Of a stretch of DNA of 64,000 nt, positions 12,326 through 64,000 are shown one piece after another (the stretch's first letter is position 1; each line of letters opens with the position of its first letter). The notes under the pieces are model-generated. The model was not told the origin of the DNA. It saw nothing but the letters and a program-made list of their open reading frames with translations, and searched no databases. Location of the stretch: positions 201,681 through 265,680 of the IMG/VR virus record IMGVR_UViG_3300028393_000019, one strand, 5' to 3'. Made by a program: the position numbers and the translations under genes.

Positions 12326-14242
12326 ATGAAAAATGTCTATCTTATACAAACTGAAATTACTTCCGGACCCTCTAATGAGCACTACCTACCATTCAGTGTA
12401 GGATGTATTTGGGCCTATGCAAACCAATTTGATTATGTGAAAAATAACTATAAATTGCAAGATGTTATTTGGCGGAGAGATAGACAAAAAAATGTAATTG
12501 AAAAGATCATCGACCCTAGTATCATTGGATTTAGTTGCTACGTATGGAATCATAAATGGAATCTAACCTTAGCTAAGAAATTAAAAGAACGTTTTCCAAA
12601 CTGTCTAATAGTGTTTGGTGGTCCTAGTGTTAATGAAGAATGGCTCAAATACGATTTTATCGATGTTGCAATGTTTGGCGAGGGAGAAGTTGCATGGGCT
12701 AATCTTTTAAAGATGAATCTTAATAACGAGACTATTCCGAGATATTGGAATAACCCGAGACAAACAGATATTGAAAATTATCCTAGCCCTTACACTACAG
12801 GGTTCTTTGATAAAATTATTGCAGACAATCCAGATATTAGTTGGTTTATGATGCTAGAAACTAACAGAGGATGTCCTTATCACTGTACGTTTTGCGGCTG
12901 GGGAGCCGACTATCTTAACAAACTAAAAAACTTTAACCTACATAGGGTTGAGGAAGAAATCAAATGGGCTATAACACATAACATACATTGGATGTTTGTG
13001 ATCGATGCTAACTCAGGTATAATGAAAGAACGTGATGTCGAAGTAGCGTGGATGATCCGCAGAGCTATAGAAGCACCCAACAGCAAAATTAGACGTGTAA
13101 CCTTTAACCATGCTAAAAATTTAAATGAGCATTGTTTTGAAATGGAAAAGATTATTCAAGCATGGACTTACGGTTTAGAAATGGCTATACAAAGCATGCA
13201 CCAGCCCACACTAGATGCTGTGAAAAGAATTAACATGGGTATGAACAATTTAGAACGTGCTTATGCCTTATGCCGTAAACACGGTATTAGATACTACACA
13301 GAGATGGTTTTAGGTTTACCTTTAGAAACCAAGGACACTTATATTAATGGCCTAATGAGATTAATGGAATTAGGACAACACGACAGCGTTAAAACTTATC
13401 CTGCTACTGTTATTCCTAATAGTGAAATGGACAGTGAAGAGTATAGAAACAAATACGGAATTAAGTTGATATATCCTAAAGATATGTATCGTAGTCCCGA
13501 AGAACGCATATGGGACGACGAAGATAGTAGTCATGAAAATATTGCCATGGTGTCGAGCACAAATACTGCTACCAGCCAAGATATTGCAGATTCATTAGCG
13601 TACAGTTGGATGATGAGTCAATTTCATTATTTAGGAATAACACAACTTACTTCACGGTACTTGTATGAAATGCATAATGTTCCATACCGTCAATATTATG
13701 ATGCATTATACAACGCAATTAAGAACGACATTATAGGCGGTCCTATACTAAATGATGTAGAAGAAATATTTGTAAATTATTTCACTTACGGTGAAATGCC
13801 TGTAGGTGAAAAATGGAAGAACGTAGTTGCATTGACTATGCCCGAAAGTTACGGTATGGACGATATATTTGAAAACAAGAATCATTTTATAGACCTCGGA
13901 GTTACCGTTGGAAACTTATTTCATACTATAGATCCAAGTGTCATAGAATTACAGTATGCTTTTATGTTGGATGAAAGCAAATCATATCCATTCATTCTAG
14001 AATCAGATATAGATATTGATAGATGGGAACGTTTATCATGCTCATATTCGGTTAATAGGCGTTACATGGTTAGTCACATGCATGACCAAATGTATCAAAA
14101 ATATTTGCTTAAAACTGATATTGCAAATATTAATAATCCTTATGTTGAAACCGACATAGAAGATTCATATAAAGGCAATAAGATCTCAGTCATTCCTATT
14201 TTACCTATACCTACAACTACCGCTAGTGGGAGAGTTATGTAA
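12326..14242 (+). CDS. Cobalamin-binding radical SAM enzyme
   Basis: N-terminal B12-binding domain (YLPFSVG, IIGFSCYVWN, VFGGP, GEGE) followed by ETNRGCPYHCTFC. Confidence 0.85.
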   Translation: MKNVYLIQTEITSGPSNEHYLPFSVGCIWAYANQFDYVKNNYKLQDVIWRRDRQKNVIEKIIDPSIIGFSCYVWNHKWNLTLAKKLKERFPNCLIVFGGPSVNEEWLKYDFIDVAMFGEGEVAWANLLKMNLNNETIPRYWNNPRQTDIENYPSPYTTGFFDKIIADNPDISWFMMLETNRGCPYHCTFCGWGADYLNKLKNFNLHRVEEEIKWAITHNIHWMFVIDANSGIMKERDVEVAWMIRRAIEAPNSKIRRVTFNHAKNLNEHCFEMEKIIQAWTYGLEMAIQSMHQPTLDAVKRINMGMNNLERAYALCRKHGIRYYTEMVLGLPLETKDTYINGLMRLMELGQHDSVKTYPATVIPNSEMDSEEYRNKYGIKLIYPKDMYRSPEERIWDDEDSSHENIAMVSSTNTATSQDIADSLAYSWMMSQFHYLGITQLTSRYLYEMHNVPYRQYYDALYNAIKNDIIGGPILNDVEEIFVNYFTYGEMPVGEKWKNVVALTMPESYGMDDIFENKNHFIDLGVTVGNLFHTIDPSVIELQYAFMLDESKSYPFILESDIDIDRWERLSCSYSVNRRYMVSHMHDQMYQKYLLKTDIANINNPYVETDIEDSYKGNKISVIPILPIPTTTASGRVM

Positions 14243-15402
14243 TGTTAATGGGCTTTAATCAAACTAACATAGACCGATTACTAGCAAGTATAAATGGTAC
14301 AGTTTTAGATCCAACAGTAAGCCTATGCCATCATTGCCATAGACATATACCAGCATGGCGCTACCATAAAGATAATCAGGTGTTTATAGCCAAGTCATGT
14401 CCCATACATGGTATTAGCCATCATATGATCGAATCTGACTATGAGTTTTATGCTAATCTATATTACACCCAGGATAATCCAGATTTTAATTTTAATGGCG
14501 GAGTACTTATCGAAGGTAGTGACCGCTGTAATTTAGAATGCCCACATTGTTACCATTTACCAGAAAACGATGCCCGCGACCCTTCTATAGAAGAATTGCT
14601 CGATCAAATACGAGATATGCCGGTAGGCGAGGATGGAGTACATAGAATCATCCTCGCCGGTGCTGAAAGTACCTTACGCAAAGACTTTCCAGAATTGATA
14701 ACAGCTATCCGTGAGTTAGATCCCGAAATGGATGTTAGTGTAATGACTAATGGCATACGTTTCAATGACAGCGATTTTATTCATAAATGTGTTGAAGCTG
14801 GACTTGCAGGTGTTAACATTGGGCTTAATCATCCAAGTTACATCGATCACGAAACTGTAAGACGTAAACAAGTTAGTGCTATTGAAAACATGCACCGTGA
14901 AGATATCAAGATAGGTTACATTAGTTATACTATGGTAGACTTCAGTGAGCTTGATTACATACTAACTGAGATTACTAGTAATCCTTGGACTCCTAAAAAT
15001 TTCCGCATACGTAATGGTGCAGAAATAGGACGTAATGCCAGCACCGAACAACCGTTTGTTAGCAACTTATACAAACGTGCGGAGCAATGGTGCAAGGATC
15101 ATAGTAAACAGTTTGAACGAATCATAGAAGCAGACAATAATATCTATCATGTTATGGTTAAGATTGAAGATAAAATTGTGCGATTAATCAGCTGGTGCGA
15201 TGAAACCAATATTGATATGGAAGAATTGCGTAGCGGACCTTGGTGTAACTTTGTACCCGACGGTATTACAAACTTCTTACATCAGATTATACGCAGAGAT
15301 GTGTTTAAAAATAAAGGACTAGCCTTACCGGATAGCCCTCCTAGTCGATATAAATTTAATCGCACACCCGATAAGTCAAAACTTAATTTGCTAAATCTAT
15401 AA
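14242..15402 (+). CDS. Radical SAM enzyme with N-terminal rubredoxin-like module (Tes/GDGT-MAS/MJ0619-like)
   Basis: SLCHHC..HIPA...KSCPIHG, then DRCNLECPHCY, AGAESTLRKDFPELI, TNGI, EAGL. Confidence 0.75.
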   Translation: MLMGFNQTNIDRLLASINGTVLDPTVSLCHHCHRHIPAWRYHKDNQVFIAKSCPIHGISHHMIESDYEFYANLYYTQDNPDFNFNGGVLIEGSDRCNLECPHCYHLPENDARDPSIEELLDQIRDMPVGEDGVHRIILAGAESTLRKDFPELITAIRELDPEMDVSVMTNGIRFNDSDFIHKCVEAGLAGVNIGLNHPSYIDHETVRRKQVSAIENMHREDIKIGYISYTMVDFSELDYILTEITSNPWTPKNFRIRNGAEIGRNASTEQPFVSNLYKRAEQWCKDHSKQFERIIEADNNIYHVMVKIEDKIVRLISWCDETNIDMEELRSGPWCNFVPDGITNFLHQIIRRDVFKNKGLALPDSPPSRYKFNRTPDKSKLNLLNL

Positions 15403-30256: not shown

Positions 30257-31089
30257 GATCACACTATTGGACATGTTCGAAATTTGCAGACTGGTTACGT
30301 GGCACACCAAAACCAGGAGCCCAAACCAGTGAAGGCTGGGATGAGTGGACTGAAAAAGCCAAGTCAGCACATCCTGTTCGTTGGTGGATTGCCGAAGAAG
30401 GATTAGATCACCTTCAAAAATTTGTTTATTATATTCCGGATCGACTAAATGACATACGCTATTATATTAACAATCGCTGGGTTAGTTACAGCCATGCTCT
30501 TACCGCACATCCTCGAGACATACAACCGGGTAACTGGAGTGATGTTGGCAATCGCTTTCTTCCTTGTATGTTCAATGAGCTTGTGGACTTTGTTGAAATA
30601 GAACAAGCATGGCATCACTGCATGTGGAGTGATGAAGCCAAAACCAAATTTGATGTGCCTTGGTGGCGCAGTGGCTGGCTACGTTTGCGTACATGGCGCA
30701 ATGCCGAAGCAGGTATGGAATATCTCAAATGGGCTAGCGAGCTTGTCGTTGGTGAAGACATGGGTGCTACTCCTGGGGACAAAGGATTCGGCGAGCCCAC
30801 CTATCAAGCCAAATCCGCTAAAGAAATCATCGAGCTTTACACTTGGTGGACTGTTACATATCGCAATCGTCCTGACCCATACGAAGCAAGTGGCTGGACT
30901 GCGGCATGCGAAGCCAGTCGTTTGGCCAACGGTGGCCGACTGAGTTTCAGCGGTGAGAAAGATCCTACACTTAAAAAAGCCAGCGACAAGGCTCACAAGC
31001 TACTTCAAAAGATTGAAAAGGCTTATGAAGCAGAAGACGAAGCTATGATGATTCGCCTTATCAAAATCCGTCAGAGTCTATGGACATAA
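30253..31089 (+). CDS. Conserved phage hypothetical protein (Trp-rich)
   Basis: 278-aa ORF, operon-coupled. Confidence 0.65.
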   Translation: MRSHYWTCSKFADWLRGTPKPGAQTSEGWDEWTEKAKSAHPVRWWIAEEGLDHLQKFVYYIPDRLNDIRYYINNRWVSYSHALTAHPRDIQPGNWSDVGNRFLPCMFNELVDFVEIEQAWHHCMWSDEAKTKFDVPWWRSGWLRLRTWRNAEAGMEYLKWASELVVGEDMGATPGDKGFGEPTYQAKSAKEIIELYTWWTVTYRNRPDPYEASGWTAACEASRLANGGRLSFSGEKDPTLKKASDKAHKLLQKIEKAYEAEDEAMMIRLIKIRQSLWT

Positions 31090-32441
31090 ACAAGTTTAGA
31101 GATGAACTTAATAGTGTCAGTCCATCATTTTGTGCCGCTAAGTGGAAGCAGGTAACGCTTCATCTCCAAACTGGGCATAACCATAGTTGCCATCATCCGG
31201 CACCTCACAAGATACCGTTAGAAGAACTGTCAGCCAATCCATCAGCGTTACACAATACCAAGTTTAAAAAACTACAACGTAAGATGATGCTGAGTGGCGA
31301 ACGTCCGGCAGAGTGTGACTACTGCTGGCGTGTTGAAGACAACAGTAACTCACTAAGTGATAGAATTTTTAAAAGTGCCGACAAGTGGGCGGCACCTCAT
31401 ATTCAAGACATAGCCAGTAAACCCTGGGACCATGATGTTGTACCCAGCTACGTAGAAGTTAGCTTTGGTAATGTGTGTAATTTTAAATGCAGTTATTGTG
31501 CGCCCAATGTCAGCTCACGTTGGATGGAAGAAATTGAAAAGTTTGGACCATATCCCACATCGGGCAAGTTCAACAACCTGGAGTGGCTGAAACAAACAGA
31601 TCAGATGCCCATACCACACAAGGACGACAATCCCTATGTTGATGCATTTTGGGAATGGTGGCCTACTGCTTATCGTGAGCTAGAGCATTTTCGTATCACT
31701 GGCGGTGAACCTTTACTGAACAAAAATACATTTAAGATTCTAGATTACATAATTGCTAATCCCAATCCAAACTTGGACTTTAGTATTAATGCCAACATGT
31801 GTCCACCGAGTGACATACTAGATAAGTTTATTGAAAAGATTAAACTGTTGGAAGGCAAAGTAAAAAGATTCAAAATCTTTACTAGTGCAGAGGCATATGG
31901 CGCTCAGGCAGAGTATATACGCAATGGTATGGACTATGCTCAATGGATCGATAATATTGAACGTGTGCTAAAAGAAGTACCAAGTGTAGGGTTTACAATC
32001 ATGAGCACCTACAATGCCCTAAGCGTTCCCAGCTATACCAAATTCTTGCAAGATGTATTGAGACTCAAAACACAATATTACAAACCAGAATATAAGCAAA
32101 CTGCTGTACTATTAGACATACCGTATCTGCGGTGGCCTCCACATCAGTCAATCTTTATTCTAACAAAGGACTTTGCCACAACAATCAAAGAGCATGTGGA
32201 CTTTGTGCAGTCTTATGCAGAAGGCACTGCAACAGAAACATACCAAGGATTTGATCGTCTTGAAGTCGAACGTATGAAACGAATATACGAAATATTTCAA
32301 TCACACGATGAACCAGATACTGTAAAGAATCAAAAAGACTTTGTAGCGTTTGTTGACGAGCATGATCGCAGACGTGGCACAAACTTCTCGGCTACATTTC
32401 CCGAGATGGTAAAATTTTACAATTACTGTCAACAGCTATGA
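31080..32441 (+). CDS. Radical SAM protein with N-terminal Twitch/SPASM-like Cys cluster
   Basis: FCAAKW...SCHH...ECDYCWRVE; GNVCNFKCSYC; ITGGEPLL. Confidence 0.85.
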   Translation: MDINKFRDELNSVSPSFCAAKWKQVTLHLQTGHNHSCHHPAPHKIPLEELSANPSALHNTKFKKLQRKMMLSGERPAECDYCWRVEDNSNSLSDRIFKSADKWAAPHIQDIASKPWDHDVVPSYVEVSFGNVCNFKCSYCAPNVSSRWMEEIEKFGPYPTSGKFNNLEWLKQTDQMPIPHKDDNPYVDAFWEWWPTAYRELEHFRITGGEPLLNKNTFKILDYIIANPNPNLDFSINANMCPPSDILDKFIEKIKLLEGKVKRFKIFTSAEAYGAQAEYIRNGMDYAQWIDNIERVLKEVPSVGFTIMSTYNALSVPSYTKFLQDVLRLKTQYYKPEYKQTAVLLDIPYLRWPPHQSIFILTKDFATTIKEHVDFVQSYAEGTATETYQGFDRLEVERMKRIYEIFQSHDEPDTVKNQKDFVAFVDEHDRRRGTNFSATFPEMVKFYNYCQQL

Positions 32442-35027: not shown

Positions 35028-36370
35028 AAATAGTTTATGACAATTGGTATCAATCTGTACCGCTGTCCAACGGACTTCATCCCATACTGGCCAATCATAT
35101 CAAAAGTTCTATACCAAGTATCGATTCTGTAGAAAGTACAGCTACTAGTCTAATGAATAGTGACATGTTCCCATTCAGGTGGCATAACAACTTTTTTAAA
35201 TATTTTAAAAATCATGCTATGGTTGATCCGGATCAAATTGTGGACGATGCTGATATCTACATCTACCCGATTGAAATACGCACTTCACTAAATTCACTAT
35301 TTCAAGATCACTCATTTAACATAGGAGGAAATAGTTGTACTTACAATATCAGCGATACCATCTCCCCCAAAGTGTTAAACCATCTGCGATCTGGCAAAGT
35401 AAAACTGGTTATAAATTACATTCATGATCCTGTCTCCAACGAAGAAGACCTACTGAAGTTTGATTCATTATTGCAATCAATAGGTATTAACGGCAAGAAT
35501 GTAATAGTAGTTGCGGGAAACGAATTCGCTGTGTCTGGTTGTAGTATAAGAGTAGTTGGTGGACCTTTGTTATTTCCTAGAGAAGATGCTGAAAGAATAA
35601 CATCAAGGCCTCGACCAGGTCGACTTGGCTACATGAACGATTTTGTCAAACAGCATGAGTTGAATCCTGATAAAATACGCCCTCACAAATTCATGTGCTT
35701 CAATAGACAATTAAGTAATCGCGCACACAGAATATCACTGGCATACCTAGCATTGAAATACAATCTGCTAGATCATAATGTGTTCAGTTTCCTTGAACAG
35801 ATAACTGAGCGACAGGTGCTGGACAGTTCCAGGGCGTGGAGTACCTATTACAAAGATGTAGACCTGTCAGAAATGGCTAGACAAATTGTAAAGATACTGC
35901 CTTGGGAAGTTGACACGCATCTTTTGAGTCAGTCTGAAAAAACTAACTTTTCAACACACAACAACAAAAAAGAACTTTATCTCAACACTTATATTCATAT
36001 TGTATCTGAAACAAGATTTCACGATGGTGATAGTCCCTTTATGTCGGAAAAGACATATAGGCCTATAGCAAACTTTCAACCGTTTTTATATGTAGGTAAT
36101 TATAATTCTTTGAAAGACCTGCATGAATTAGGGTTTAGAACATTTCATCCTTATATTAACGAGGAATACGATCTTGAACAAGATCCCGAATTGCGCATGG
36201 CGCTGATAGAACACGAATTAAAAAAATTAAATGATTTAACACTTGAACAAATTCACGAATTGTATTTTAGTGTAAAAGATATATTGATCCATAATCGAAA
36301 CCATCTGACTACATTTATCAATGCACAACCTTACCAAAATTTAATAAGAGACCTTCAACATGGAATTTAA
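35012..36370 (+). CDS. Putative glycosyltransferase-like protein (paralog of 32438-33847)
   Basis: IVSET...MSEKTYRP...QPFL...LHELGFRTF...NEEYD block. Confidence 0.5.
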   Translation: MDSILKIVYDNWYQSVPLSNGLHPILANHIKSSIPSIDSVESTATSLMNSDMFPFRWHNNFFKYFKNHAMVDPDQIVDDADIYIYPIEIRTSLNSLFQDHSFNIGGNSCTYNISDTISPKVLNHLRSGKVKLVINYIHDPVSNEEDLLKFDSLLQSIGINGKNVIVVAGNEFAVSGCSIRVVGGPLLFPREDAERITSRPRPGRLGYMNDFVKQHELNPDKIRPHKFMCFNRQLSNRAHRISLAYLALKYNLLDHNVFSFLEQITERQVLDSSRAWSTYYKDVDLSEMARQIVKILPWEVDTHLLSQSEKTNFSTHNNKKELYLNTYIHIVSETRFHDGDSPFMSEKTYRPIANFQPFLYVGNYNSLKDLHELGFRTFHPYINEEYDLEQDPELRMALIEHELKKLNDLTLEQIHELYFSVKDILIHNRNHLTTFINAQPYQNLIRDLQHGI

Positions 36371-37343
36371 AAATAAAAATATAGTCGTTACAGGTGCCAA
36401 CGGACTAGTGGGATTACCTGCGGTTCGCAAGTGCTTAGAAGAAGGTGCTCATGCAGTTTATGCAGTGGACATTAATATAGGAGAAGGATTGATTTCCTTA
36501 AGAGAACAATACTCTAATCTAATACTGGTAATGAAAGACCTAACATATTTGGACAACTGCGAGTCACTGTTTGAAGAACAACCGATTGATATTGTACTGC
36601 ATATTGCAGGAATAAAAGGATCGCCAGCACGTAGTAGCAAACAACCTGCAGACTACTTGTTTCCTATGTTGATGTTCAATACCAACATGATCAAGGCCGC
36701 ATTTGATGCCAAGGTCGGTTGGTTTGTTTATCTTTCAAGTGTAGGTGTTTACCAACCTACAGAGATCATGCGTGAAGAAGATGTATGGGTCACTGTGCCC
36801 AGTAAGAATGATTGGTATCCGGGGTGGACCAAACGTATGGGTGAAGCTACATTAGAAAGCCTACAAGTACAGTATGGATGGGACAACTGGACTGTGATAC
36901 GTCCCAGCAACATCTACGGACTCAATGACAACTTTGCACAAGACGCTACTGTGATCAGTAGCAACGTCTGGAAGTTGTACAACGTTGAGGGCAAAGATAT
37001 AGTGTGTTGGGGTAACGGCAGTGCAAGGCGTGACTTTGTGTTCGGCGATGATGTTGCACAGGCTAGTGTTGATGTGGTCAAGAAAGAAGTAAAAGATATT
37101 ATCAACTTTGGTTGTGCAGAAGCCATCACTATCAAAGAAACCATTGAGACTATAGTTGACTGCTATAAAGAAATATCAGGTGAAACTAAGAACATTGTCT
37201 GGGACGAAACAAAAATGAATGGAGATCCTGTTCGTTGTCTAAGTCCAGATCGTCAAAAGAAATACGGTATACTTCCGCAAACAACCTTGCGTGATGGTAT
37301 CAAGCAGACCATCCTAGCATACAAACAAAGGTTAGGCCAATGA
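36360..37343 (+). CDS. NDP-sugar epimerase/reductase (GDP-fucose synthase-like extended SDR)
   Basis: VTGANGLVG, LSSVGVY, PGWTK, RPSNIYG, WGNGSARRDF. Confidence 0.8.
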   Translation: MEFKNKNIVVTGANGLVGLPAVRKCLEEGAHAVYAVDINIGEGLISLREQYSNLILVMKDLTYLDNCESLFEEQPIDIVLHIAGIKGSPARSSKQPADYLFPMLMFNTNMIKAAFDAKVGWFVYLSSVGVYQPTEIMREEDVWVTVPSKNDWYPGWTKRMGEATLESLQVQYGWDNWTVIRPSNIYGLNDNFAQDATVISSNVWKLYNVEGKDIVCWGNGSARRDFVFGDDVAQASVDVVKKEVKDIINFGCAEAITIKETIETIVDCYKEISGETKNIVWDETKMNGDPVRCLSPDRQKKYGILPQTTLRDGIKQTILAYKQRLGQ

Positions 37344-38332
37344 AAACTACAGATAAGATTTTGGTAACAGGGGCAAGCGGATTCATTGGCTCCAATGTGC
37401 TTCGAGTGCTGTATCAACAAGGGTTCACTAATCTACGTGCTAGCACACTACAGAGAGGCTTACGGAATGACTTTAACGGATCGGAAACTATCGAACTAGT
37501 TAAGGGTGATCTGCGTGATGCAGACTTTGCTAAATTTGTGTCGCAAGACATTGATGTGGTAATACACTGCGCGGCTAACACTAGTAATGCACTGGATACT
37601 AAGTTCAATCCGTTATTACATGTTACTCCCAATGTTGAGATGAATAACAACATAATGGAACAAAGCTGGAAGAACAAGGTGCGTAAATTTATCTTTATCA
37701 GCACAGCAAACGTCAATGGCGACCTTGGTTCAGTGTATGCTGTAGAAGACGCCAACTTTATGAACTTGCCGCTAGTACCTGTGTACAAAGCAGTGGGTGC
37801 TATGAAACGCTTTGGCGAGATGATGTGCGACTTCTTTAGTAATCAAATACATGATCCAATGCAGTGCGTCATTATTCGTCCAAGCAACGCATTTGGGCCC
37901 AATGACAAGTATGACTTTGAGAAATGCCATGTTACACCTGCAAACATTCGCAAAGTGGCGGACAGGCTGAATCCAATTCCTGTTTGGGGTGATGGTACAG
38001 AAATACGTGATGTGCTACACGCAGACGACATGGCCGGAGGCATTGTGTATGTTGCAGAGCATGTGGACACCTATGATATCTACAATGTGTGCTACGGTCA
38101 AGGCTACAGCGTTAACCAATTACTTGAGTGGATGAAAGAAGCCGACGGCAATACTAACCCAATTGAGTACGTTAACAATCGAGCACCTATGATTCCAGTT
38201 CGTCTAGTATCTAGTGAAAAGATTAATGCGCTAGGCTGGAAACCAAAGCGTGAGATTAAACAAGCACTAAAGGATACTATCGAATGGTATCGTGCGCACA
38301 AAGAACAATTTGATCCAAATAGCAAGCCATGA
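37340..38332 (+). CDS. NDP-sugar epimerase/reductase (GDP-fucose synthase-like)
   Basis: VTGASGFIG, RPSNAFGPND, HVTPA.IRK, WGDGTEIRD. Confidence 0.8.
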   Translation: MKTTDKILVTGASGFIGSNVLRVLYQQGFTNLRASTLQRGLRNDFNGSETIELVKGDLRDADFAKFVSQDIDVVIHCAANTSNALDTKFNPLLHVTPNVEMNNNIMEQSWKNKVRKFIFISTANVNGDLGSVYAVEDANFMNLPLVPVYKAVGAMKRFGEMMCDFFSNQIHDPMQCVIIRPSNAFGPNDKYDFEKCHVTPANIRKVADRLNPIPVWGDGTEIRDVLHADDMAGGIVYVAEHVDTYDIYNVCYGQGYSVNQLLEWMKEADGNTNPIEYVNNRAPMIPVRLVSSEKINALGWKPKREIKQALKDTIEWYRAHKEQFDPNSKP

Positions 38333-39267
38333 AGCGAGTACTAATCACAGGCGGTGCTGGCTACCTAGGCTCTACACTAGCTGAACATTTACTAACACAG
38401 GGCTACAGTGTAACTGTATTTGATAACTTGTTGTACAAACAGTTATCCTTGTTGCATCTATTTAACAGACAGGGCTTTAAATTTGTCTTAGGTGATGTTA
38501 GAGATACTAGACAACTACAGGCATTGGTTAAAGAACATGATATCATTATTCCCCTAGCCGCAATCGTGGGAATGCCTGCTTGCCGAGCCAATCCCGAACT
38601 GGCCAGAGATGTAAACTACAAGCATATAAGATACATAGTGGAAGTACTGGCCAGTGATCAAAAGCTGATCATTCCCAACACCAACAGCCAATACGGATCA
38701 AGTGACGAAATCATTACCGAAGATAGTCCATTCAAACCTTTGAGTTTATATGCCGAAACCAAATGCGATGCAGAAGATGCTGTGCTGTATCATGGCAACG
38801 GTGTTGCACTAAGACTGGCCACAGTGTTTGGTGTCAGTCCACGTATGCGTCAAGACTTGCTGGTAAATGACTTTGTTTATAAAGCAGTTACTGATGGATA
38901 CTTGGTATTGTTTGAAGCGCACTTTAAACGCAATTACATTCATGTACAGGACATTGCCCAAACGTTTCAGTTTATAATTGAAAACTACGACCAGTGTCGA
39001 GGGCAGGCTTATAATGTAGGATTGTCTACTGCTAACCTAAGCAAGCTGGAACTTGCAGAGTGCATTAAAAAGTATGTGCCTAAACTGGCAATCAAGCAGG
39101 ACGAGTTTGCCAAAGACTTTGATCAGCGCAATTACATAGTGAGCAATGCCAAATTGGAAGCATTAGGATGGAATCCCACTTTTAGTTTAGACTACGGCAT
39201 TGAACAACTAATTACAGCATATCAGATGACAATAGTCCACAACAACCGGAACTTTACAAACCTATGA
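38329..39267 (+). CDS. NAD-dependent epimerase/dehydratase
   Basis: ITGGAGYLG, YAETK, LRLATVFGVSPRMRQDLLVN. Confidence 0.85.
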   Translation: MKRVLITGGAGYLGSTLAEHLLTQGYSVTVFDNLLYKQLSLLHLFNRQGFKFVLGDVRDTRQLQALVKEHDIIIPLAAIVGMPACRANPELARDVNYKHIRYIVEVLASDQKLIIPNTNSQYGSSDEIITEDSPFKPLSLYAETKCDAEDAVLYHGNGVALRLATVFGVSPRMRQDLLVNDFVYKAVTDGYLVLFEAHFKRNYIHVQDIAQTFQFIIENYDQCRGQAYNVGLSTANLSKLELAECIKKYVPKLAIKQDEFAKDFDQRNYIVSNAKLEALGWNPTFSLDYGIEQLITAYQMTIVHNNRNFTNL

Positions 39268-45300: not shown

Positions 45301-45373
45301 ATGCGGACTTAGGCATTCATCCCGCAATATAAACTCTGCATGCCATTGCTTAATCAAGGAGATTACAATGGCA
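45301..45373 (+). ncRNA. Candidate cis-regulatory RNA (riboswitch-like pseudoknot/sequestration switch) in the queD leader
   Basis: P1 TGCGG/CCGCA, loop GGCAT pairs with ATGCC (pseudoknot), mutually exclusive with a 13-bp hairpin TGCCATTG+TAATC/GATTA+CAATGGCA covering the start codon. Confidence 0.6.
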
Positions 45374-45853
45374 AAATTTTACTCAACAAAAACTTACGGA
45401 AACGACCGCGGCTTATCATGCTGTTTTAGACAATGGCGTGCCACACACAGCCACTGCTCGACACTACATGGTTACTCAATCGGCATCAAGCTAATCTTTG
45501 AATGCGATACACTAGATGACAAAAACTGGTGTATGGACTTTGGTGGGCTTAAAGAATTTAAAGCGTGGGCAGACTATATGTTTGATCACACGTTAGTAAT
45601 CGCAGAAGATGATCCTCACTTAGAAACATTCCAAAAACTAAATGCAATTAAGGGCGGTTTTGAAGACAGCGGAATATGTGATCTACGCATTGTGCCCGGA
45701 GTAGGCTGTGAAATGTTTGCTAAAATAGCCTACGATAAAATGGCTGAACTTTTGGCAAGTGGTGATATGCGTTATCCAATTAATCCAACAGTAAGAATCA
45801 AATCGGTCGAGGTGTTCGAACATGGCGCAAATTCGGCTACCTACGAAGGTTGA
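45368..45853 (+). CDS. queD: 6-pyruvoyl-tetrahydropterin/6-carboxytetrahydropterin synthase family
   Basis: HSHCSTLHGY, DFGGLK, DHT, GCEMFA, VEVFEHGANSATY. Confidence 0.8.
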   Translation: MAKFYSTKTYGNDRGLSCCFRQWRATHSHCSTLHGYSIGIKLIFECDTLDDKNWCMDFGGLKEFKAWADYMFDHTLVIAEDDPHLETFQKLNAIKGGFEDSGICDLRIVPGVGCEMFAKIAYDKMAELLASGDMRYPINPTVRIKSVEVFEHGANSATYEG

Positions 45854-46067
45854 TTTTTATATTGAGTGGCTCGCTACTGTATCATTTTTATGTTCAGTGG
45901 CGTTGACCTCTCTTAACTACTATCCAACTTATCTATATATCAGTCTATTAACCAATGTACTTTGGTTAATAGTAGGTATTATCTGGCGCAAATGGTCGCT
46001 CATAACAGTTGAATTTGTCGTCTGTTTCATGTATACTATAGGTATTATAAACTACTGGCTACACTAA
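45822..46067 (+). CDS. Small 3-TM membrane protein
   Basis: 81 aa with three hydrophobic helices; start uncertain. Confidence 0.55.
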   Translation: MAQIRLPTKVDFYIEWLATVSFLCSVALTSLNYYPTYLYISLLTNVLWLIVGIIWRKWSLITVEFVVCFMYTIGIINYWLH

Positions 46068-47092
46068 TGAAACGTCTCGGCTTTGCCTGCAAGTGGATCG
46101 ATCGTCCAGATCAAGTGGACGGTATCAGTCCAAAAGACGATGCAAAAAAATACAACACTGGTTCGACTACAGTTTCTTGGTTAAATAGACAATCGAGAGA
46201 TCAAGCGGAACAAAAGTTATGGGACCTAATGGTAGGCAATATCGAGGCAACTCGAAAGTTGGTAGAACGTGTCAGCACACTTGACCCTCATCTTAGGATG
46301 GTTAGGATTAGCAGTGACATTCTCCCTGTTTATACTCACGCTGACTTTGCTGATTATTGGCGTAAACCTGACGTGGTTTCATACGCCGAAACCGCGTTTA
46401 AAAGAGTGGGCGATCTTGCTCGCAATAGCAATGTTCGGTTGTCTATGCATCCTGGGCAGTTTACTGTCCTGGCAAGCGATAACCCAGGCATTGTCGAACG
46501 CTCAATCGCAGAGTTCGAATATCACACAGACATGGCCCGCTGGATGGGCTATGGAAAGTCGTTTCAAGACTTTAAAATCAATGTACACATATCAGGTAAA
46601 CAAGGTCCCGAAGGTATCAGACGAGCCTACGGAAAACTAACACCCGAAGCTCGAAACTGTATTACAATCGAAAACGAAGAAAACTCATGGGGGCTAGATG
46701 ATTGTCTCACTATTAGCGATATTATACCTATTGTTCTTGACGTTCATCATTTTTGGATTCGAGAAGGAAGTTACTTAGATCCTAGCGATATCCGAGTTAC
46801 ACGGGTTGTTGACAGCTGGCGCGGCCTTCGTCCTACTATGCATTACTCCATATCAAGAGAAGACTATCTTGTTGGACACGATCCAATGGTTCCACCAGAC
46901 CATAAACAGCTTCTTTTAGACGGTTACAAAAAGCAAAAGCTCAGAGCCCACTCTGACTTTTATTGGAATACAAAAGTTAGTGAATGGGCCTTGAGCTTTT
47001 TAGAAACACACGATATTATGTGCGAATCTAAGGGTAAGAACTTGGCTAGCTTTGCTCTATACGAGCAAGCTAAACTACTTAAACTGCTTTAG
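46067..47092 (+). CDS. uvsE: UV DNA damage endonuclease (UvsE/UVDE)
   Basis: RISSDILP, RLSMHPGQF.VL.S, INVHISG, ITIENEE, VLDVHH, TMHYS, RAHSD, IMCESKGK. Confidence 0.9.
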   Translation: MKRLGFACKWIDRPDQVDGISPKDDAKKYNTGSTTVSWLNRQSRDQAEQKLWDLMVGNIEATRKLVERVSTLDPHLRMVRISSDILPVYTHADFADYWRKPDVVSYAETAFKRVGDLARNSNVRLSMHPGQFTVLASDNPGIVERSIAEFEYHTDMARWMGYGKSFQDFKINVHISGKQGPEGIRRAYGKLTPEARNCITIENEENSWGLDDCLTISDIIPIVLDVHHFWIREGSYLDPSDIRVTRVVDSWRGLRPTMHYSISREDYLVGHDPMVPPDHKQLLLDGYKKQKLRAHSDFYWNTKVSEWALSFLETHDIMCESKGKNLASFALYEQAKLLKLL

Positions 47093-47334: not shown

Positions 47335-47895
47335 ATGTATAACTTTATTAGGTACGTTAGTTTAAATGAGGGCTACTCTCCCAAAACATTGGAGCAATCT
47401 CCCTTGCCATACGCCAAGGATGATTTAGAGCCAGTCAAAAGTGAAGATACTATAAACTATCATTATGGAACACTGTACAAAGGATATGTAGATCGCTACA
47501 ACAAAGGTGAAGGAGATCCCGACTTCAACGAAGCAGGTGCTTTTTTACATGACATTTATTTCAAACAGTTTCATAAACCCACAGGTAACAATCATCCCGA
47601 TCACATAGCTTTGAATTTTATCAACAAACACTTTAAGACTTTTGAAAATTTCCGAGACAAAGTGCAAAAGTCAGCTATGGGTATACAGGGGTCTGGTTGG
47701 GTATACCTGGCTCGTGATGGGTCAATCAAAACTATCAAGAATCATGAGATTCGAATGGATATCATACTGCTGATTGACTGGTGGGAACATGCTTGGGCTT
47801 TGGATTATCAAGCTGACAAAAAAGCCTACTTGCGAAACATCTACAAAATAATCAACTGGAATGTGATTGGCTCTAGAGTTGGTCGAGTGTCTTAA
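47335..47895 (+). CDS. sod: Fe/Mn superoxide dismutase
   Basis: LPYAKDDLEP, TINYHY, FLHDIYF, GSGWVYL, IDWWEHAW; all four metal ligands present. Confidence 0.85.
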   Translation: MYNFIRYVSLNEGYSPKTLEQSPLPYAKDDLEPVKSEDTINYHYGTLYKGYVDRYNKGEGDPDFNEAGAFLHDIYFKQFHKPTGNNHPDHIALNFINKHFKTFENFRDKVQKSAMGIQGSGWVYLARDGSIKTIKNHEIRMDIILLIDWWEHAWALDYQADKKAYLRNIYKIINWNVIGSRVGRVS

Positions 47896-48165: not shown

Positions 48166-48201
48166 TATTTACATTAAGGTTATAAAATTCTATGCTAAAT
48201 A
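48166..48201. promoter_or_regulatory. Back-to-back late promoter cores
   Basis: TATTTA 48166-48171 and TAAATA 48196-48201. Confidence 0.55.
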
Positions 48202-48218
48202 TTACAACAAGGGACAAC

Positions 48219-48542
48219 ATGATCACTATTTCTGCTTCGGCCAAGACTAAAATTAAAGATTTGATCTACGAAGAGGGCAATCCTAACCTAGCACTGCGTA
48301 CATTTGTACAGGGCGGCGGGTGTAGCGGATTCAGCTATGGCTTCACATTCGATGAAATAGCAAATGAAGATGATTTTACAATTCCCTTAGACGAATTTCG
48401 AGTACTTGTAGATGCAATGAGTATGCAGTATCTTACAGGTGCAGAGATAGATTATAAAGAAGATTTACAGGGCAGTTCATTCAGCATAAAGAATCCCAAC
48501 GCACAAACAACATGCGGTTGCGGTTCTAGCTTTGGAGTTTAA
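48219..48542 (+). CDS. erpA: A-type Fe-S cluster carrier (ErpA/IscA/HesB)
   Basis: [40 protein letters not shown]. Confidence 0.92.
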
Positions 48543-48545
48543 TAA

Positions 48546-62051
<13,506 letters not shown>

Positions 62052-62059: not shown

Positions 62060-62076
62060 CTAAAAGAGAGTCTACT

Positions 62077-62826
62077 ATGACAGCACCATTACAAATTAAT
62101 ATCGGATCATACGCAAACGACGGCACAGGCGATGATTTGCGCAGTGCTTTTACCAAGGTAAATGCTAATTTTCTTGCTATCAGTCAAAGTGTAGGAATAA
62201 CCGGTGTTACTAATCTGGGCACTGGCACTGGTATTTTCAAAGACATACTTAACAATAATGCAGAGTTAAAAACACTAACCAGCACAGGAAATACTGTGGT
62301 CTTGACCGGTACAGCCACAACTGTAAACCTAGAAGCCAAGACTATATTATCTAGCGATACTACACCGTCGCTGAGTGCAAATTTGAATTTAAACAATTAC
62401 AAAATCACCGGTGGCGATGCACAAACCACAGTGTATGGATATGATCAACGTATAAGCGAAAATTTACTATCATTACTGTTAAACACAAACAATCTCACAG
62501 TAGACATGGGTACTATCGCCGCACCCACTGGATTTGAAACAAATGCCAAAGGATACTCTTGGGATTTCGGGGCAAATTTTATAACCAATAATAATCACAT
62601 AAACTTTGGAACTATTGCCGGTACTACACTAATTCAAGATGGACAAGACCATCAAGTGACACTGAGTGGGAATTTGGTTACTTCAGGCGGCTACAATTTG
62701 AATTTAAATCTCATAGGAAACAGTTCAGTAACATTGCCAGCCAGTGGCACCATATTATCAACTACCAGCCCAGCTGTTAGTTCACTAAGAGCACTGTCTG
62801 TGGCAATGGCTGCGGCCTTGGGTTAA
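62077..62826 (+). CDS. Structural protein, gp9/gp10-like N-terminus
   Basis: ATG at 62077; INIGSYANDGTGDDLRSAFTKVNANF; ends [10 protein letters not shown]. Confidence 0.75.
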   Translation: MTAPLQINIGSYANDGTGDDLRSAFTKVNANFLAISQSVGITGVTNLGTGTGIFKDILNNNAELKTLTSTGNTVVLTGTATTVNLEAKTILSSDTTPSLSANLNLNNYKITGGDAQTTVYGYDQRISENLLSLLLNTNNLTVDMGTIAAPTGFETNAKGYSWDFGANFITNNNHINFGTIAGTTLIQDGQDHQVTLSGNLVTSGGYNLNLNLIGNSSVTLPASGTILSTTSPAVSSLRALSVAMAAALG

Positions 62827-62837
62827 CTAAAAATATT

Positions 62838-64000
62838 ATGCCTTTAAATATCTGGACACAACCAACAGGTTATAGTTTTGGAACATTTCCTGAGCAAGTA
62901 TCGGTTAACTTACCATTACCGTTAATACCTGCGGCAGGATTTAACGGCGTGCCGCCGCCAAGCTACGACGGAACTGGGCACCATCCTACAGCACCGTTAC
63001 GCAATAGTGCAGGAGCACCATTTGCTCGAAATGCAGTAAACAGCTATACAGATGGCTTACATGCTATGCGTACTGATCTAGCCAATGCTCGCACAGTTAG
63101 TAATTTAGTAGTATGGGATCAAGTAAATGAAGGTGAAACTGTTGATCCAACTGGCTATAGTGGATTCATGTATGCATGGGGTCAATTCATAACTCATGAA
63201 CTAGCTAGTGAAAGAACTGGCGGTGCTAATATCGATGTTATAGTACCTGCTGGAGATACTAACCTAACACCAGGTAGTCATATTCCTGTATCTCGTGCGC
63301 AGGTTGCCGCAGGTACTGGGATCAATGGCATTGTTGCACTACCAATCAACGATGTAACTGGATGGATCGATGGTAGTGTAGTTTATGGTATTGCATACCC
63401 TCCCGGTGTTACACCAGTTAGTGGATTTACTAACCCAGTATTATTGCGAGAAGGCGGTTCAATCGCCACTACTGGCAAATTGTTAACATCTAGCAACGGA
63501 CAATATGGTCCCATTGTTAATGGATCATTTTTGTTTGGAGATCCCCGTGGAACTGAAAATCCGGATTTAACGTCTATACAAACATTATTCATTAGAGAAC
63601 ACAACTGGCATGTTGATCAGCTACGTGCGGCTAATCCATCTTGGACGGGTGAACAGTTATATCAACGTGCCCGCAATATTGTTATTGCAGAAGAACAAGT
63701 CATTACTTACAAAGAATGGTTACCAAAGATTATCGGTAATGATGCGATATCTGCTTACACTGGATTTAAACCTGAAGTCGATGCAAGTATAAAAATAGAA
63801 TTTGCTGCCGCGGCACTACGCTTTGGCCATAGCATAGTGTCTGGCGCACAAGATCGTGTAGATGAAGCGGGCAACATTACAGAATCTTTAACTTTAGGAC
63901 AAGCGTTTTTCTTAACACCTGCACAGTATGAACGCAACGGTGGCGCAAACGGATTCTTAAGAAAATTAGCCAGCGATATATCTAACAAATTAGATGTATA
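62838..64000 (+). CDS. Animal heme peroxidase (peroxidase-cyclooxygenase superfamily) domain protein, 3' truncated; not in ORF track
   Basis: 387 codons open to the window end: WGQFITHE (distal His), INDVTGWIDGSVVYG, GDPRGTENP (distal Arg/Glu), LFIREHN, ARNIVIAE.Q.ITYKEWLP, ALRFGHS (proximal His). Confidence 0.9.
   Translation, partial: MPLNIWTQPTGYSFGTFPEQVSVNLPLPLIPAAGFNGVPPPSYDGTGHHPTAPLRNSAGAPFARNAVNSYTDGLHAMRTDLANARTVSNLVVWDQVNEGETVDPTGYSGFMYAWGQFITHELASERTGGANIDVIVPAGDTNLTPGSHIPVSRAQVAAGTGINGIVALPINDVTGWIDGSVVYGIAYPPGVTPVSGFTNPVLLREGGSIATTGKLLTSSNGQYGPIVNGSFLFGDPRGTENPDLTSIQTLFIREHNWHVDQLRAANPSWTGEQLYQRARNIVIAEEQVITYKEWLPKIIGNDAISAYTGFKPEVDASIKIEFAAAALRFGHSIVSGAQDRVDEAGNITESLTLGQAFFLTPAQYERNGGANGFLRKLASDISNKLDV

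What the first reader, a model, noticed from the sequence alone, without database searches (positions are those of the whole stretch)
62838..64000. Animal-type heme peroxidase domain in the virion structural operon
Seen: an ORF missed by the track because it runs off the window. It has a complete peroxidase-cyclooxygenase catalytic set: distal His (63195-97), Arg (63546-48), heme-ester Glu in R-G-T-E, the Ca-binding T..IDGS.VYG segment and proximal His (63828-30). The myeloperoxidase ester-forming Asp before the distal His is Thr here, and the following Asp is Glu. The ORF follows three genes with gp9/gp10-like N-termini and has no signal peptide. It begins MPLNIWTQPTGYSFGTFPEQVSVNLPLPL, a beta-rich segment that is not peroxidase and resembles the start of baseplate/Ig-like virion proteins (recollection, unverified). 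Inference: a heme peroxidase built into or carried on the virion. Possible roles are ROS protection of particles in sunlit water, di-tyrosine cross-linking of fibres, halide oxidation, or oxidative attack on host surface polymers. I know of no characterised virion heme peroxidase.
Basis: partly seen in the sequence, partly recalled or inferred. Interest (0 to 1): 0.85.

Follow-up and report, generated by a model that had tools for sequence, protein, structure and literature searches.

The report
Heme peroxidase inserted in phage surface protein
An uncultivated jumbo phage from lake-type metagenomes has an intact, selectively maintained animal-type heme peroxidase spliced into the first Ig-like domain of a large protein encoded at the end of its tail-fibre gene cluster; no such enzyme is present in sequenced phage isolates or in the literature searched, and its presence on the particle is inferred, not shown.

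Summary

Full-length orthologues on 20 or more other viral contigs are about 1,340-1,640 aa. Their order is:
- a 30-aa N-terminal beta segment
- a complete peroxidase domain
- the rest of a cadherin/He_PIG-type Ig domain
- about five more beta-sandwich domains
- a conserved alpha/beta C-terminal domain

Most members of this large protein family (more than 1,780 hits) lack the peroxidase. In those, the N-terminal segment runs straight into the Ig domain.

The peroxidase is a monophyletic, phage-specific cassette. Its dN/dS is 0.06-0.18. The ester-forming Asp is always Thr. It occurs at two different insertion sites and has been exchanged between divergent host proteins.

A distant homologue in Agrobacterium phage Atu_ph07 carries a subtilase instead. 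That protein was detected, weakly, in purified virions.

Virion display is well supported by inference. A baseplate location and the function remain unproven. No isolate genome or paper with a phage heme peroxidase was found.

The parts
62838..64000 (+). 5' part (387 codons) of the gene for a modular protein of about 1,400 aa. Layout: Ig-strand segment, inserted heme peroxidase, Ig-like chain, C-terminal domain. The gene is cut by the contig end.
   Evidence: Full-length orthologues are 1,343-1,639 aa. L001:10001-14194 has An_peroxidase at 42-536 (E = 3e-114) plus He_PIG.
62838..62927 (+). aa 1-30 (MPLNIWTQPTGYSFGTFPEQVSVNLPLPLI): the first beta-strand segment of Ig-like (He_PIG/cadherin-like) domain 1, separated from the rest of that domain by the peroxidase insert.
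   Evidence: A profile of domain 1 from 59 peroxidase-less homologues matches window aa 1-34 (E = 8e-12), and matches L001 as 1-30 plus 561-635. In the AF2 model of peroxidase-less P0152, residues 12-18 and 23-26 are strands with pLDDT 85-90. N-termini are listed.
62961..63998 (+). aa 42-387: animal-type heme peroxidase domain (first ~70% of it).
   Evidence: Pfam PF03098, E = 4e-64, profile 3-370 of 530. Best solved relatives are CyanoPOX 8S6C (E = 8e-82) and Dictyostelium DdPoxA 6ERC (E = 6e-63), for orthologue L001.
63183..63200 (+). Distal motif Q-F-I-T-H-E: Gln116, Thr119 (replaces the ester-forming Asp), distal His120, Glu121 (replaces the Ca-ligand Asp).
   Evidence: Thr is invariant in all phage copies. 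77 of 80 cellular homologues have Asp.
63357..63389 (+). Distal Ca2+-binding loop T-G-W-I-D-G-S-V-V-Y-G.
   Evidence: It corresponds to the CyanoPOX ligands Thr140, Trp142, Asp144 and Ser146 (PMC11776367).
63546..63557 (+). Catalytic Arg237 and heme-ester Glu240 (R-G-T-E).
   Evidence: Invariant in the family.
63828..63830 (+). Proximal heme ligand His331 (R-F-G-H-S).
48546..61796 (+). Giant 4,416-aa fibre-like protein with a gp9/gp10-like N-terminus; first gene of the co-oriented cluster.
   Evidence: The syntenic giant gene is 5,222 aa in L111.
61796..62050 (+). 84-aa protein with a T4_gp9_10_N-like N-terminus.
   Evidence: Pfam PF07880, E = 1e-6; phrog_677, E = 2.5e-13.
62074..62826 (+). 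Fibre-like protein of about 250 aa. The probable start is the Met of MTAPLQINIG. It has a gp9/10-like N-terminus and shares the C-terminal motif AMAAALG with the 84-aa protein.
   Evidence: The same pair of genes (84 aa, 249 aa) precedes the peroxidase-less orthologue in L027.

Best explanation
**What it is.** The ORF is the start of a core gene of an uncultivated aquatic jumbo myophage lineage. The nearest isolates by clamp loader are PA5oct-like Arenbergviridae, Sinorhizobium phage Phosso and Agrobacterium phage Atu_ph07.

**Architecture (shown).** The gene encodes a long modular protein: about six cadherin/He_PIG-type beta-sandwich domains followed by a conserved alpha/beta C-terminal domain. 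I take the C-terminal domain to be the attachment module. In this phage and a minority of relatives, a complete heme peroxidase domain of about 520 aa, flanked by Pro-rich linkers, is inserted in a loop after the first ~30 residues of Ig domain 1.

**Location (inferred).** The enzyme would be carried on the particle at the far end of an Ig-like stalk.

**Chemistry (inferred).** The catalytic set is intact but the ester-forming Asp is Thr. I therefore predict a heme b that becomes linked by a single Glu ester, as in DdPoxA. Such an enzyme uses H2O2 to oxidise easy two-electron donors (iodide, thiocyanate) or one-electron substrates. It would not oxidise chloride.

**Role (least certain).** The most likely role is extracellular chemistry at the host surface during adsorption or penetration: oxidative modification or cross-linking of envelope or matrix polymers. 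This would parallel the subtilase, CBM5/12 and other modules found in homologues.

**Evolution (shown).** The cassette is mobile within this gene family. It occupies two insertion sites, has a patchy distribution, and shows recent exchange between divergent host proteins.
For: **Peroxidase domain is intact**
- Pfam and PDB sequence matches plus all catalytic motifs.
- Purifying selection: dN/dS 0.06-0.18 over the domain.
- The domain has no or almost no Cys, so no disulfides are needed for folding in the cytoplasm.

**It is an insertion in a conserved protein**
- More than 1,780 homologues of the non-peroxidase part. 14 of the best 120 carry PF03098; the rest run from the N-terminal segment directly into He_PIG.
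- Split profile match.
- Syntenic peroxidase-less orthologues L027 and L111.

**Second insertion site**
- In P0004 the peroxidase sits at 734-1246, between positions ~521 and ~543 of the peroxidase-less protein, in a syntenic locus.

**Cassette behaviour**
- Phage peroxidases form one clade, SH-aLRT 99.
- Presence needs at least 16 changes on the tree of the non-peroxidase part.
- L001 versus L002: peroxidase dS 0.19, but the rest of the same genes has dN 0.41 and dS about 2.

**Virion link**
- The gene is always last in a co-oriented cluster of fibre-like genes with gp9/10-type N-termini.
- The non-peroxidase part folds as a cadherin-like chain.
- Atu_ph07 gp329 (Peptidase_S8 + He_PIG + the same C-terminal module; hhalign probability 99.5%, E = 1e-22) lies in a structural gene cluster and was found in the virion proteome.

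**One-ester chemistry**
- DdPoxA has Ile at the Asp position and a single Glu ester. It oxidises iodide and thiocyanate at >1e8 M-1 s-1, bromide poorly and chloride not at all (PMC5787809).
Against: - No direct evidence that this protein is in particles.
- The Atu_ph07 homologue is distant, about 24-27% identical over the C-terminal half. It was seen with 3 peptides and 2% coverage in a PEG-purified preparation.
- The C-terminal domain matches no solved baseplate, tail or capsid protein. The only PDB resemblance is a weak 2H-phosphoesterase-like fold with no conserved His.
- Heme and Ca2+ loading in the host cytoplasm is assumed.
- The H2O2 source and the substrate are unknown.
- The gene sits beside oxidative-stress and repair genes (SOD, UvdE, IscA-like). 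That could point to an intracellular antioxidant role.
Confidence: 0.6

Rival explanations
1. The peroxidase is on the virion, but it serves the particle itself. It would either scavenge peroxide to protect the particle, or catalyse dityrosine or other oxidative cross-links that harden the very long fibres and their attachment after assembly or release.
For: - The neighbouring genes encode giant fibres of 4,416-5,222 aa.
- From general knowledge: peroxidasin, which combines Ig domains with the same peroxidase fold, cross-links collagen IV.
- The window also has a Fe/Mn SOD that would produce H2O2.
Against: - Most relatives have the same fibres but no peroxidase, so it is not needed for assembly or stability.
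- The patchy, exchangeable distribution resembles host-interaction modules. Homologues carry a protease or a carbohydrate-binding module instead.
- A peroxidase needs a reductant to remove H2O2.
Confidence: 0.2
2. The protein is not a virion component. It is an auxiliary enzyme made during infection, released at lysis or active inside the cell, that handles reactive oxygen. The Ig-like chain serves some other purpose.
For: - Adjacent auxiliary genes: SOD, UvdE, IscA-like, QueD.
- No PHROG or solved-structure match places the non-peroxidase part in a known virion component.
- Proteome evidence for the homologue is thin.
Against: - The gene is conserved as the last member of the fibre-gene cluster, on the same strand, only 11 nt after the preceding stop, with no terminator-like site between.
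- A long cadherin-like chain is typical of exposed surface proteins.
- The Atu_ph07 homologue lies in structural cluster CDS 284-329 and was detected in particles.
Confidence: 0.13
3. The domain has lost catalysis and serves as an adhesion or binding module, peroxinectin-like. The Asp-to-Thr change would be a mark of that shift.
For: - Thr replaces the ester Asp in every phage copy.
- The Ca-ligand Asp is Glu in about half of the copies.
Against: - Gln, His, Arg, the ester Glu, the proximal His and the Asn/Arg motif NIQRGRD are invariant over copies down to about 50% identity.
- dN/dS is 0.06-0.18.
- DdPoxA lacks the same Asp and is a very fast enzyme.
Confidence: 0.06
4. Assembly chimera joining phage DNA to host peroxidase DNA.
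For: The contig ends inside the gene, and several other contigs also break there.
Against: - The same in-frame junctions on both sides of the domain occur on about 20 full-length copies from many samples.
- GC is 0.42, the same as the flanks.
- The phage copies form their own clade, about 50% identical to the nearest cellular genes.
Confidence: 0.01

Closest known systems
Bacterial members of the peroxidase-cyclooxygenase superfamily (CyanoPOX, PDB 8S6C; LspPOX-type)
   Same: Best solved relative (E = 8e-82). Same distal Gln/His/Arg, ester Glu, proximal His, Asn/Arg and distal Ca site. Cys-free like the bacterial homologues.
   Different: The ester Asp (Asp80 in CyanoPOX) is Thr. There is no signal or export sequence. 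It is not a stand-alone enzyme but is inserted in a phage Ig-like protein. The nearest cellular sequences are only about 50% identical and lie outside the phage clade.
Dictyostelium DdPoxA (PDB 6ERC), the characterised one-ester peroxidase
   Same: Lacks the distal Asp (Ile there, Thr here) and keeps the Glu. This is the basis for predicting a single heme-protein ester and iodide/thiocyanate rather than chloride chemistry.
   Different: DdPoxA is a secreted, glycosylated eukaryotic enzyme. The substitution is independent. The activity of the phage domain is untested.
Agrobacterium phage Atu_ph07 gp329 (and the Sinorhizobium phage Phosso homologue)
   Same: Same He_PIG repeats and C-terminal module (hhalign probability 99.5%; Foldseek BFVD E = 3e-11). 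It carries an enzyme domain N-terminal to them, lies in the tail and structural region, and was detected in virions.
   Different: The enzyme is a subtilase (Peptidase_S8), not a peroxidase. Only about 24-27% identical. Different phage genus.
Peroxidasin and peroxinectin (animal extracellular-matrix peroxidases)
   Same: Same catalytic fold combined with Ig-type or adhesive parts in one extracellular protein (general knowledge; Pfam family).
   Different: No common ancestry of the architecture. Peroxidasin has both ester residues and makes HOBr. Here the peroxidase is inserted inside an Ig domain of a phage protein.
Virion-borne tail-fibre or tail-spike enzymes (depolymerases, peptidoglycan hydrolases)
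   Same: The concept: an exchangeable enzymatic module on an exposed virion protein that acts on the host surface. It shows the same patchy, recombining distribution.
   Different: The known examples are hydrolases or lyases needing no cofactor. This would be a heme- and H2O2-dependent oxidoreductase. No example was found in 50,697 phage records or in the literature searched.

Membership tests
Peroxidase-cyclooxygenase superfamily (Pfam An_peroxidase PF03098) | Profile match above the curated threshold over the whole domain | tested here: met
   Window fragment: 217.5 bits against a cutoff of 25, profile 3-370 of 530. Orthologue L001: 382.9 bits, profile 3-530.
Peroxidase-cyclooxygenase superfamily | Distal triad Gln-His-Arg | tested here: met
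   Gln116, His120 and Arg237 in the window. Invariant in all phage copies.
Peroxidase-cyclooxygenase superfamily | Proximal His with Asn/Arg partners | tested here: met
   His331 is in the window. The Asn/Arg motif NIQRGRD lies beyond the contig end but is present in every full-length orthologue.
Peroxidase-cyclooxygenase superfamily | Distal Ca2+ site (Asp after the distal His, plus the T-x-W/F-x-D-x-S loop) | tested here: met
   The loop T174-G-W-I-D-G-S is present. The residue after His is Glu here and Asp in about half the orthologues. Ligand list.
Two-ester heme peroxidases (LPO, EPO, peroxidasin, LspPOX type) | Both ester-forming residues, Asp before the distal His and Glu after the Arg | tested here: not met
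   Glu240 is present. The Asp position is Thr119 in all phage copies, whereas 77 of 80 cellular homologues have Asp.
Myeloperoxidase type | Met sulfonium link next to the ester Glu | tested here: not met
   The sequence is R-G-T-E-N-P, with no Met.
Any active heme peroxidase | Binds heme and turns over H2O2 | not testable with these tools
   Needs recombinant protein.
He_PIG/cadherin-like Ig-chain family with conserved C-terminal module (includes Atu_ph07 gp329) | N-terminal segment and He_PIG domain 1 of the family | tested here: met
   Window aa 1-34 match the domain-1 profile (E = 8e-12). Orthologues contain He_PIG.
He_PIG/cadherin-like Ig-chain family with conserved C-terminal module | Conserved C-terminal domain of about 285 aa | tested here: inconclusive
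   Present in all full-length orthologues, but this contig ends before it.
He_PIG/cadherin-like Ig-chain family with conserved C-terminal module | Component of the virion | not testable with these tools
   The only evidence is the published proteome of the distant homologue: 3 peptides, 2.08% coverage.
T4-type baseplate proteins (gp6, 7, 8, 9, 10, 11) | Sequence or fold similarity to a solved baseplate protein | tested here: not met
   No Pfam, PHROG or PDB sequence match for the non-peroxidase part. Foldseek gave cadherins for the chain and weak 2H-phosphoesterase hits for the C-terminal domain. The gp9/10-like N-terminus is in the neighbouring genes, not in this ORF.

The most novel reading that the evidence does not exclude
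Particles of a widespread group of uncultivated freshwater-type jumbo phages carry an active heme peroxidase at the tip of an Ig-like stalk. It would use ambient or host-derived H2O2 to make reactive oxidants (hypoiodous or hypothiocyanous acid, or radicals) at the host surface as part of infection. This would be a new, cofactor-dependent class of virion enzyme, spread as a mobile cassette among phage surface proteins.
Probability: 0.35. Interest if true: 0.85.

Novelty: new variant of a known kind. Interest (0 to 1): 0.72.

Why it matters
- **A different kind of virion enzyme.** Known virion-borne phage enzymes are hydrolases and lyases. A heme- and H2O2-dependent oxidoreductase on a phage particle would add redox chemistry to the ways phages deal with host envelopes or the environment.
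- **A link to water chemistry.** It would tie phage infection to peroxide and (pseudo)halide chemistry in sunlit waters.
- **A natural domain-insertion site.** Peroxidase, ubiquitin-like, CBM5/12 and subtilase modules all occur in homologues of this protein. That shows how jumbo phages diversify exposed proteins.
- **A possible reagent.** The domain is Cys-free and presumably folds in the cytoplasm, which could make it a convenient one-ester model peroxidase.
- **The claim is testable.** It needs recombinant protein and viral-fraction proteomics.

Tried and rejected
- **GenBank phage records.** megablast and tblastn of the ORF against 50,697 records found no match.
- **PHROGs.** No family for the ORF, the full-length orthologue, the peroxidase-less homologue or its C-terminal domain.
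- **PDB sequence search with the profile of the peroxidase-less protein.** Nothing meaningful.
- **Foldseek of the whole peroxidase-less model.** Dominated by generic cadherin and Ig chains, so the C-terminal domain had to be modelled separately. That model gave only a weak 2H-phosphoesterase-like resemblance (TM 0.4-0.55, no conserved His), which I do not treat as a functional assignment.
- **PA5oct minor tail protein gp182.** Tested as a possible homologue; hhalign probability 0.3%, rejected.
- **tblastn of the Atu_ph07 C-terminal module.** Found only Atu_ph07 and Phosso.
- **L016 versus L027.** I expected a very recent deletion, but they are only about 71-80% identical, so they do not date the event.
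- **Cys-free composition.** Shared with the bacterial homologues, so it is not a phage adaptation.
- **Promoter and terminator scan.** At chance level.
- **Literature.** Six of the nine literature searches were aimed at phage or virion heme peroxidases and returned nothing relevant. The two partial matches that I opened, ahpC as a viral auxiliary gene and the Psh defence preprint, are unrelated.
- **Not attempted.** The contig start could not be inspected to see whether the gene continues there. The host was not identified.

Full report
**1. The observation**

The frame starting at ATG 62838 is open for 387 codons to the end of the window. The window end is also the end of a 265,680-bp IMG/VR contig, so the gene is cut by assembly (L004).

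The fragment matches Pfam An_peroxidase at E = 4e-64, 217.5 bits, profile positions 3-370 of 530.
- Gln116, Thr119, His120 and Glu121 in G-Q-F-I-T-H-E
- the Ca loop T-G-W-I-D-G-S-V-V-Y-G
- Arg237 and Glu240 in R-G-T-E
- His331 in R-F-G-H-S

The three upstream genes all begin with gp9/gp10-like N-termini. They are 4,416 aa, 84 aa and about 250 aa. The region has the same GC (0.42) as its surroundings.

**2. The whole gene**

A scan of IMG/VR found 27 related loci. About twenty hold a full-length gene of 1,343-1,639 aa.

In L001, which is 95% identical over the window fragment, the protein is 1,397 aa. It has An_peroxidase at 42-536 (E = 3e-114, complete profile), then He_PIG Ig-like domains, then about 750 further residues without a family.

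**3. The protein that carries the peroxidase**

Searching the non-peroxidase part (L001 residues 545-1397) returned more than 1,780 homologues. Most are 850-950 aa with only He_PIG. 14 of the best 120 carry PF03098.

Their N-termini read M-x-L-N-V-W-T-Q-P-S-G-Y-S-F-G-T-F-x-E...L-P-V and run straight into G-V-T-Y-x-V-I-S-G-x-L-P-G-G-L. This is the same segment that opens the window ORF.

A profile of the first 100 positions of 59 peroxidase-less members matches window aa 1-34 (E = 8e-12). It matches L001 in two pieces, 1-30 and 561-635. The peroxidase is therefore an insertion of about 520 aa within Ig-like domain 1, with Pro-rich linkers on both sides.

L027 is a syntenic orthologue without the insert, preceded by the same 84-aa and 249-aa genes. 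L111 shows the same for a peroxidase-less member. Its gene order is:
- giant fibre gene
- small fibre-like genes
- this gene
- 202-aa gene
- DNA_pol3_alpha fragment
- Cpn10
- clamp loader
- PhoH on the opposite strand

P0004 lies in a locus with the same downstream genes (DNA_pol3_alpha fragment, Cpn10, clamp loader, PhoH). There the peroxidase sits at 734-1246, between positions ~521 and ~543 of the peroxidase-less protein.

Other members carry a ubiquitin-like domain, a CBM5/12, or unassigned inserts near the N-terminus.

**4. Fold**

An AlphaFold2 model of the peroxidase-less P0152 has mean pLDDT 73.6. It shows about six beta-sandwich domains over residues 1-580 and an alpha/beta C-terminal domain.

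Foldseek against PDB returns cadherin and protocadherin ectodomains for the chain.

The C-terminal domain modelled alone has pTM 0.72. Its only PDB resemblance is weak, to 2H phosphoesterases, and no His is conserved. Among viral models it matches uncultured-phage 'Ig' proteins, Atu_ph07 'extracellular serine proteinase' and a Klebsiella phage K64-1 protein. No T4 baseplate protein was matched, so 'baseplate' is not established.

**5. Link to virions**

Atu_ph07 gp329 is 1,251 aa. It has Peptidase_S8 at 177-459, three He_PIG domains and a C-terminal half that aligns to positions 384-845 of the peroxidase-less family profile (hhalign probability 99.5%, E = 1e-22).

It lies upstream of tail-fibre and sheath genes, inside structural cluster CDS 284-329. 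It is listed in the virion ESI-MS/MS table with 3 peptides and 2.08% coverage (PMC6102473). This is supportive but thin, and the homologue is distant.

By clamp loader, the nearest isolates are PA5oct-type phages (52.6%), Phosso (47%) and Atu_ph07 (45%).

**6. The peroxidase as a cassette**

All phage copies, including the second-site P0004, share G-Q-F-[IL]-T-H-[DE]. The Gln/His/Arg, Glu, His and N-I-Q-R-G-R-D motifs are invariant.

Cellular homologues are 40-53% identical. They come from Alphaproteobacteria, Mycobacterium, Synechococcus, Planctomycetota and other bins. 77 of 80 have Asp at the Thr position.

On a tree of the domain, the 28 phage copies form one side of a branch with SH-aLRT 99. 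On a tree of the C-terminal 780 residues of the carrier protein, presence of the peroxidase needs at least 16 changes among 135 rows.

dN/dS over the domain is 0.06-0.18. Between L001 and L002 the domain has dS 0.19, while the rest of the same genes has dN 0.41 and saturated dS. That indicates recent transfer of the cassette between divergent carrier proteins.

Several contigs, this one included, break inside or at the edge of the domain. This is expected if near-identical cassettes are shared by co-occurring phages.

**7. Predicted chemistry**

CyanoPOX is the best solved relative. It defines the equivalent residues: His81, Asp80/Glu202, Arg199, His294 and the Ca ligands (PMC11776367).

DdPoxA has Ile at the Asp position and a single Glu ester. 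It oxidises iodide and thiocyanate at >1e8 M-1 s-1, bromide at 15 M-1 s-1 and chloride not at all. Reduction potential in this superfamily scales with the number of heme links (PMC5787809).

By analogy, the phage enzyme should be a one-ester peroxidase of low halogenating power. This is inference.

**8. Function**

Three lines of evidence bear on function:
- The module is dispensable, exchangeable, under strong constraint where present, and sits at the far end of an Ig-like chain.
- Homologues carry a protease or a carbohydrate-binding module.
- The gene closes a fibre cluster.

I therefore favour a virion-displayed enzyme acting on the host surface or matrix (about 0.35). Next come particle self-protection or cross-linking (about 0.2) and a non-virion antioxidant role (about 0.13). 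A catalytically dead adhesion module is unlikely. A chimera is excluded.

**9. Novelty**

There is no match to the peroxidase in 50,697 GenBank phage records and none in PHROGs. No paper was found.

The enzyme family and the idea of enzyme-bearing virion proteins are both known. The combination, the within-Ig insertion and the phage-specific Thr clade are new.

Noticed in passing
window 47335-47895 (+); also 46067-47092, 48192-48542, 45368-45853: A Fe/Mn superoxide dismutase gene (Pfam Sod_Fe_C/N; no PHROG family) lies just upstream of the fibre cluster, with UvdE, an IscA-like Fe-S protein and QueD. SOD makes H2O2, the peroxidase's substrate. Co-occurrence with the peroxidase cassette was not tested.
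   Followed up: no
window 7620-9188 (+): A 522-aa protein matches the phage 'tryptophan halogenase' family phrog_2928 (E = 1e-97). This is a second halogen-related or oxidative enzyme in the same genome.
   Followed up: no
window 48546-61796 (+): A single 4,416-aa ORF with a gp9/gp10-like N-terminus and no Pfam domain. The syntenic gene is 5,222 aa or more in L111 and at least 2,988 aa in L028.
   Followed up: partly
window 61796-62050 and 62074-62826 (+): The two small fibre-like proteins share both the gp9/10-like N-terminus and an identical C-terminal motif, A-M-A-A-A-L-G. The giant protein does not end this way.
   Followed up: partly
L003, L004 (window), L008, L009, L026; P0151, P0165: Many independent contigs end inside the peroxidase, or their gene calls start at its C-terminal edge. 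L009 is the same phage from another sample and breaks 93 codons earlier. This is probably assembly breakage at a cassette shared by co-occurring phages.
   Followed up: partly
P0164, P0184, P0196, P0212, P0231, P0004: Other family members carry a ubiquitin-like domain, a CBM5/12, an E1_FCCH-like segment or unassigned inserts of 70-200 aa at or near the same N-terminal site.
   Followed up: partly
P0152:578-862 (model m49e2a7db3954): The conserved C-terminal domain has a weak 2H-phosphoesterase-like (Usb1/LigT) fold, but no His is conserved. Its invariant residues include L-P-L-W-M-R and C-x-C. The same domain is predicted in Klebsiella phage K64-1 protein A0A0A8JBP4.
   Followed up: partly
L066 and L070 (short contigs binned as Chloroflexota): These are the only two sequences from cellular genome bins with the phage-like G-Q-F-L-T-H-E motif. 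The long ORF has a signal-peptide-like start and shows the Ca-loop motif before the distal-His motif. This may be a permutation, a frame artefact or a misbinned contig. They were not included in the tree.
   Followed up: no
window 36360-39267, 14242-15402, 31080-32441: Three tandem nucleotide-sugar epimerase paralogues and two radical-SAM proteins. The window is rich in auxiliary metabolic genes.
   Followed up: no
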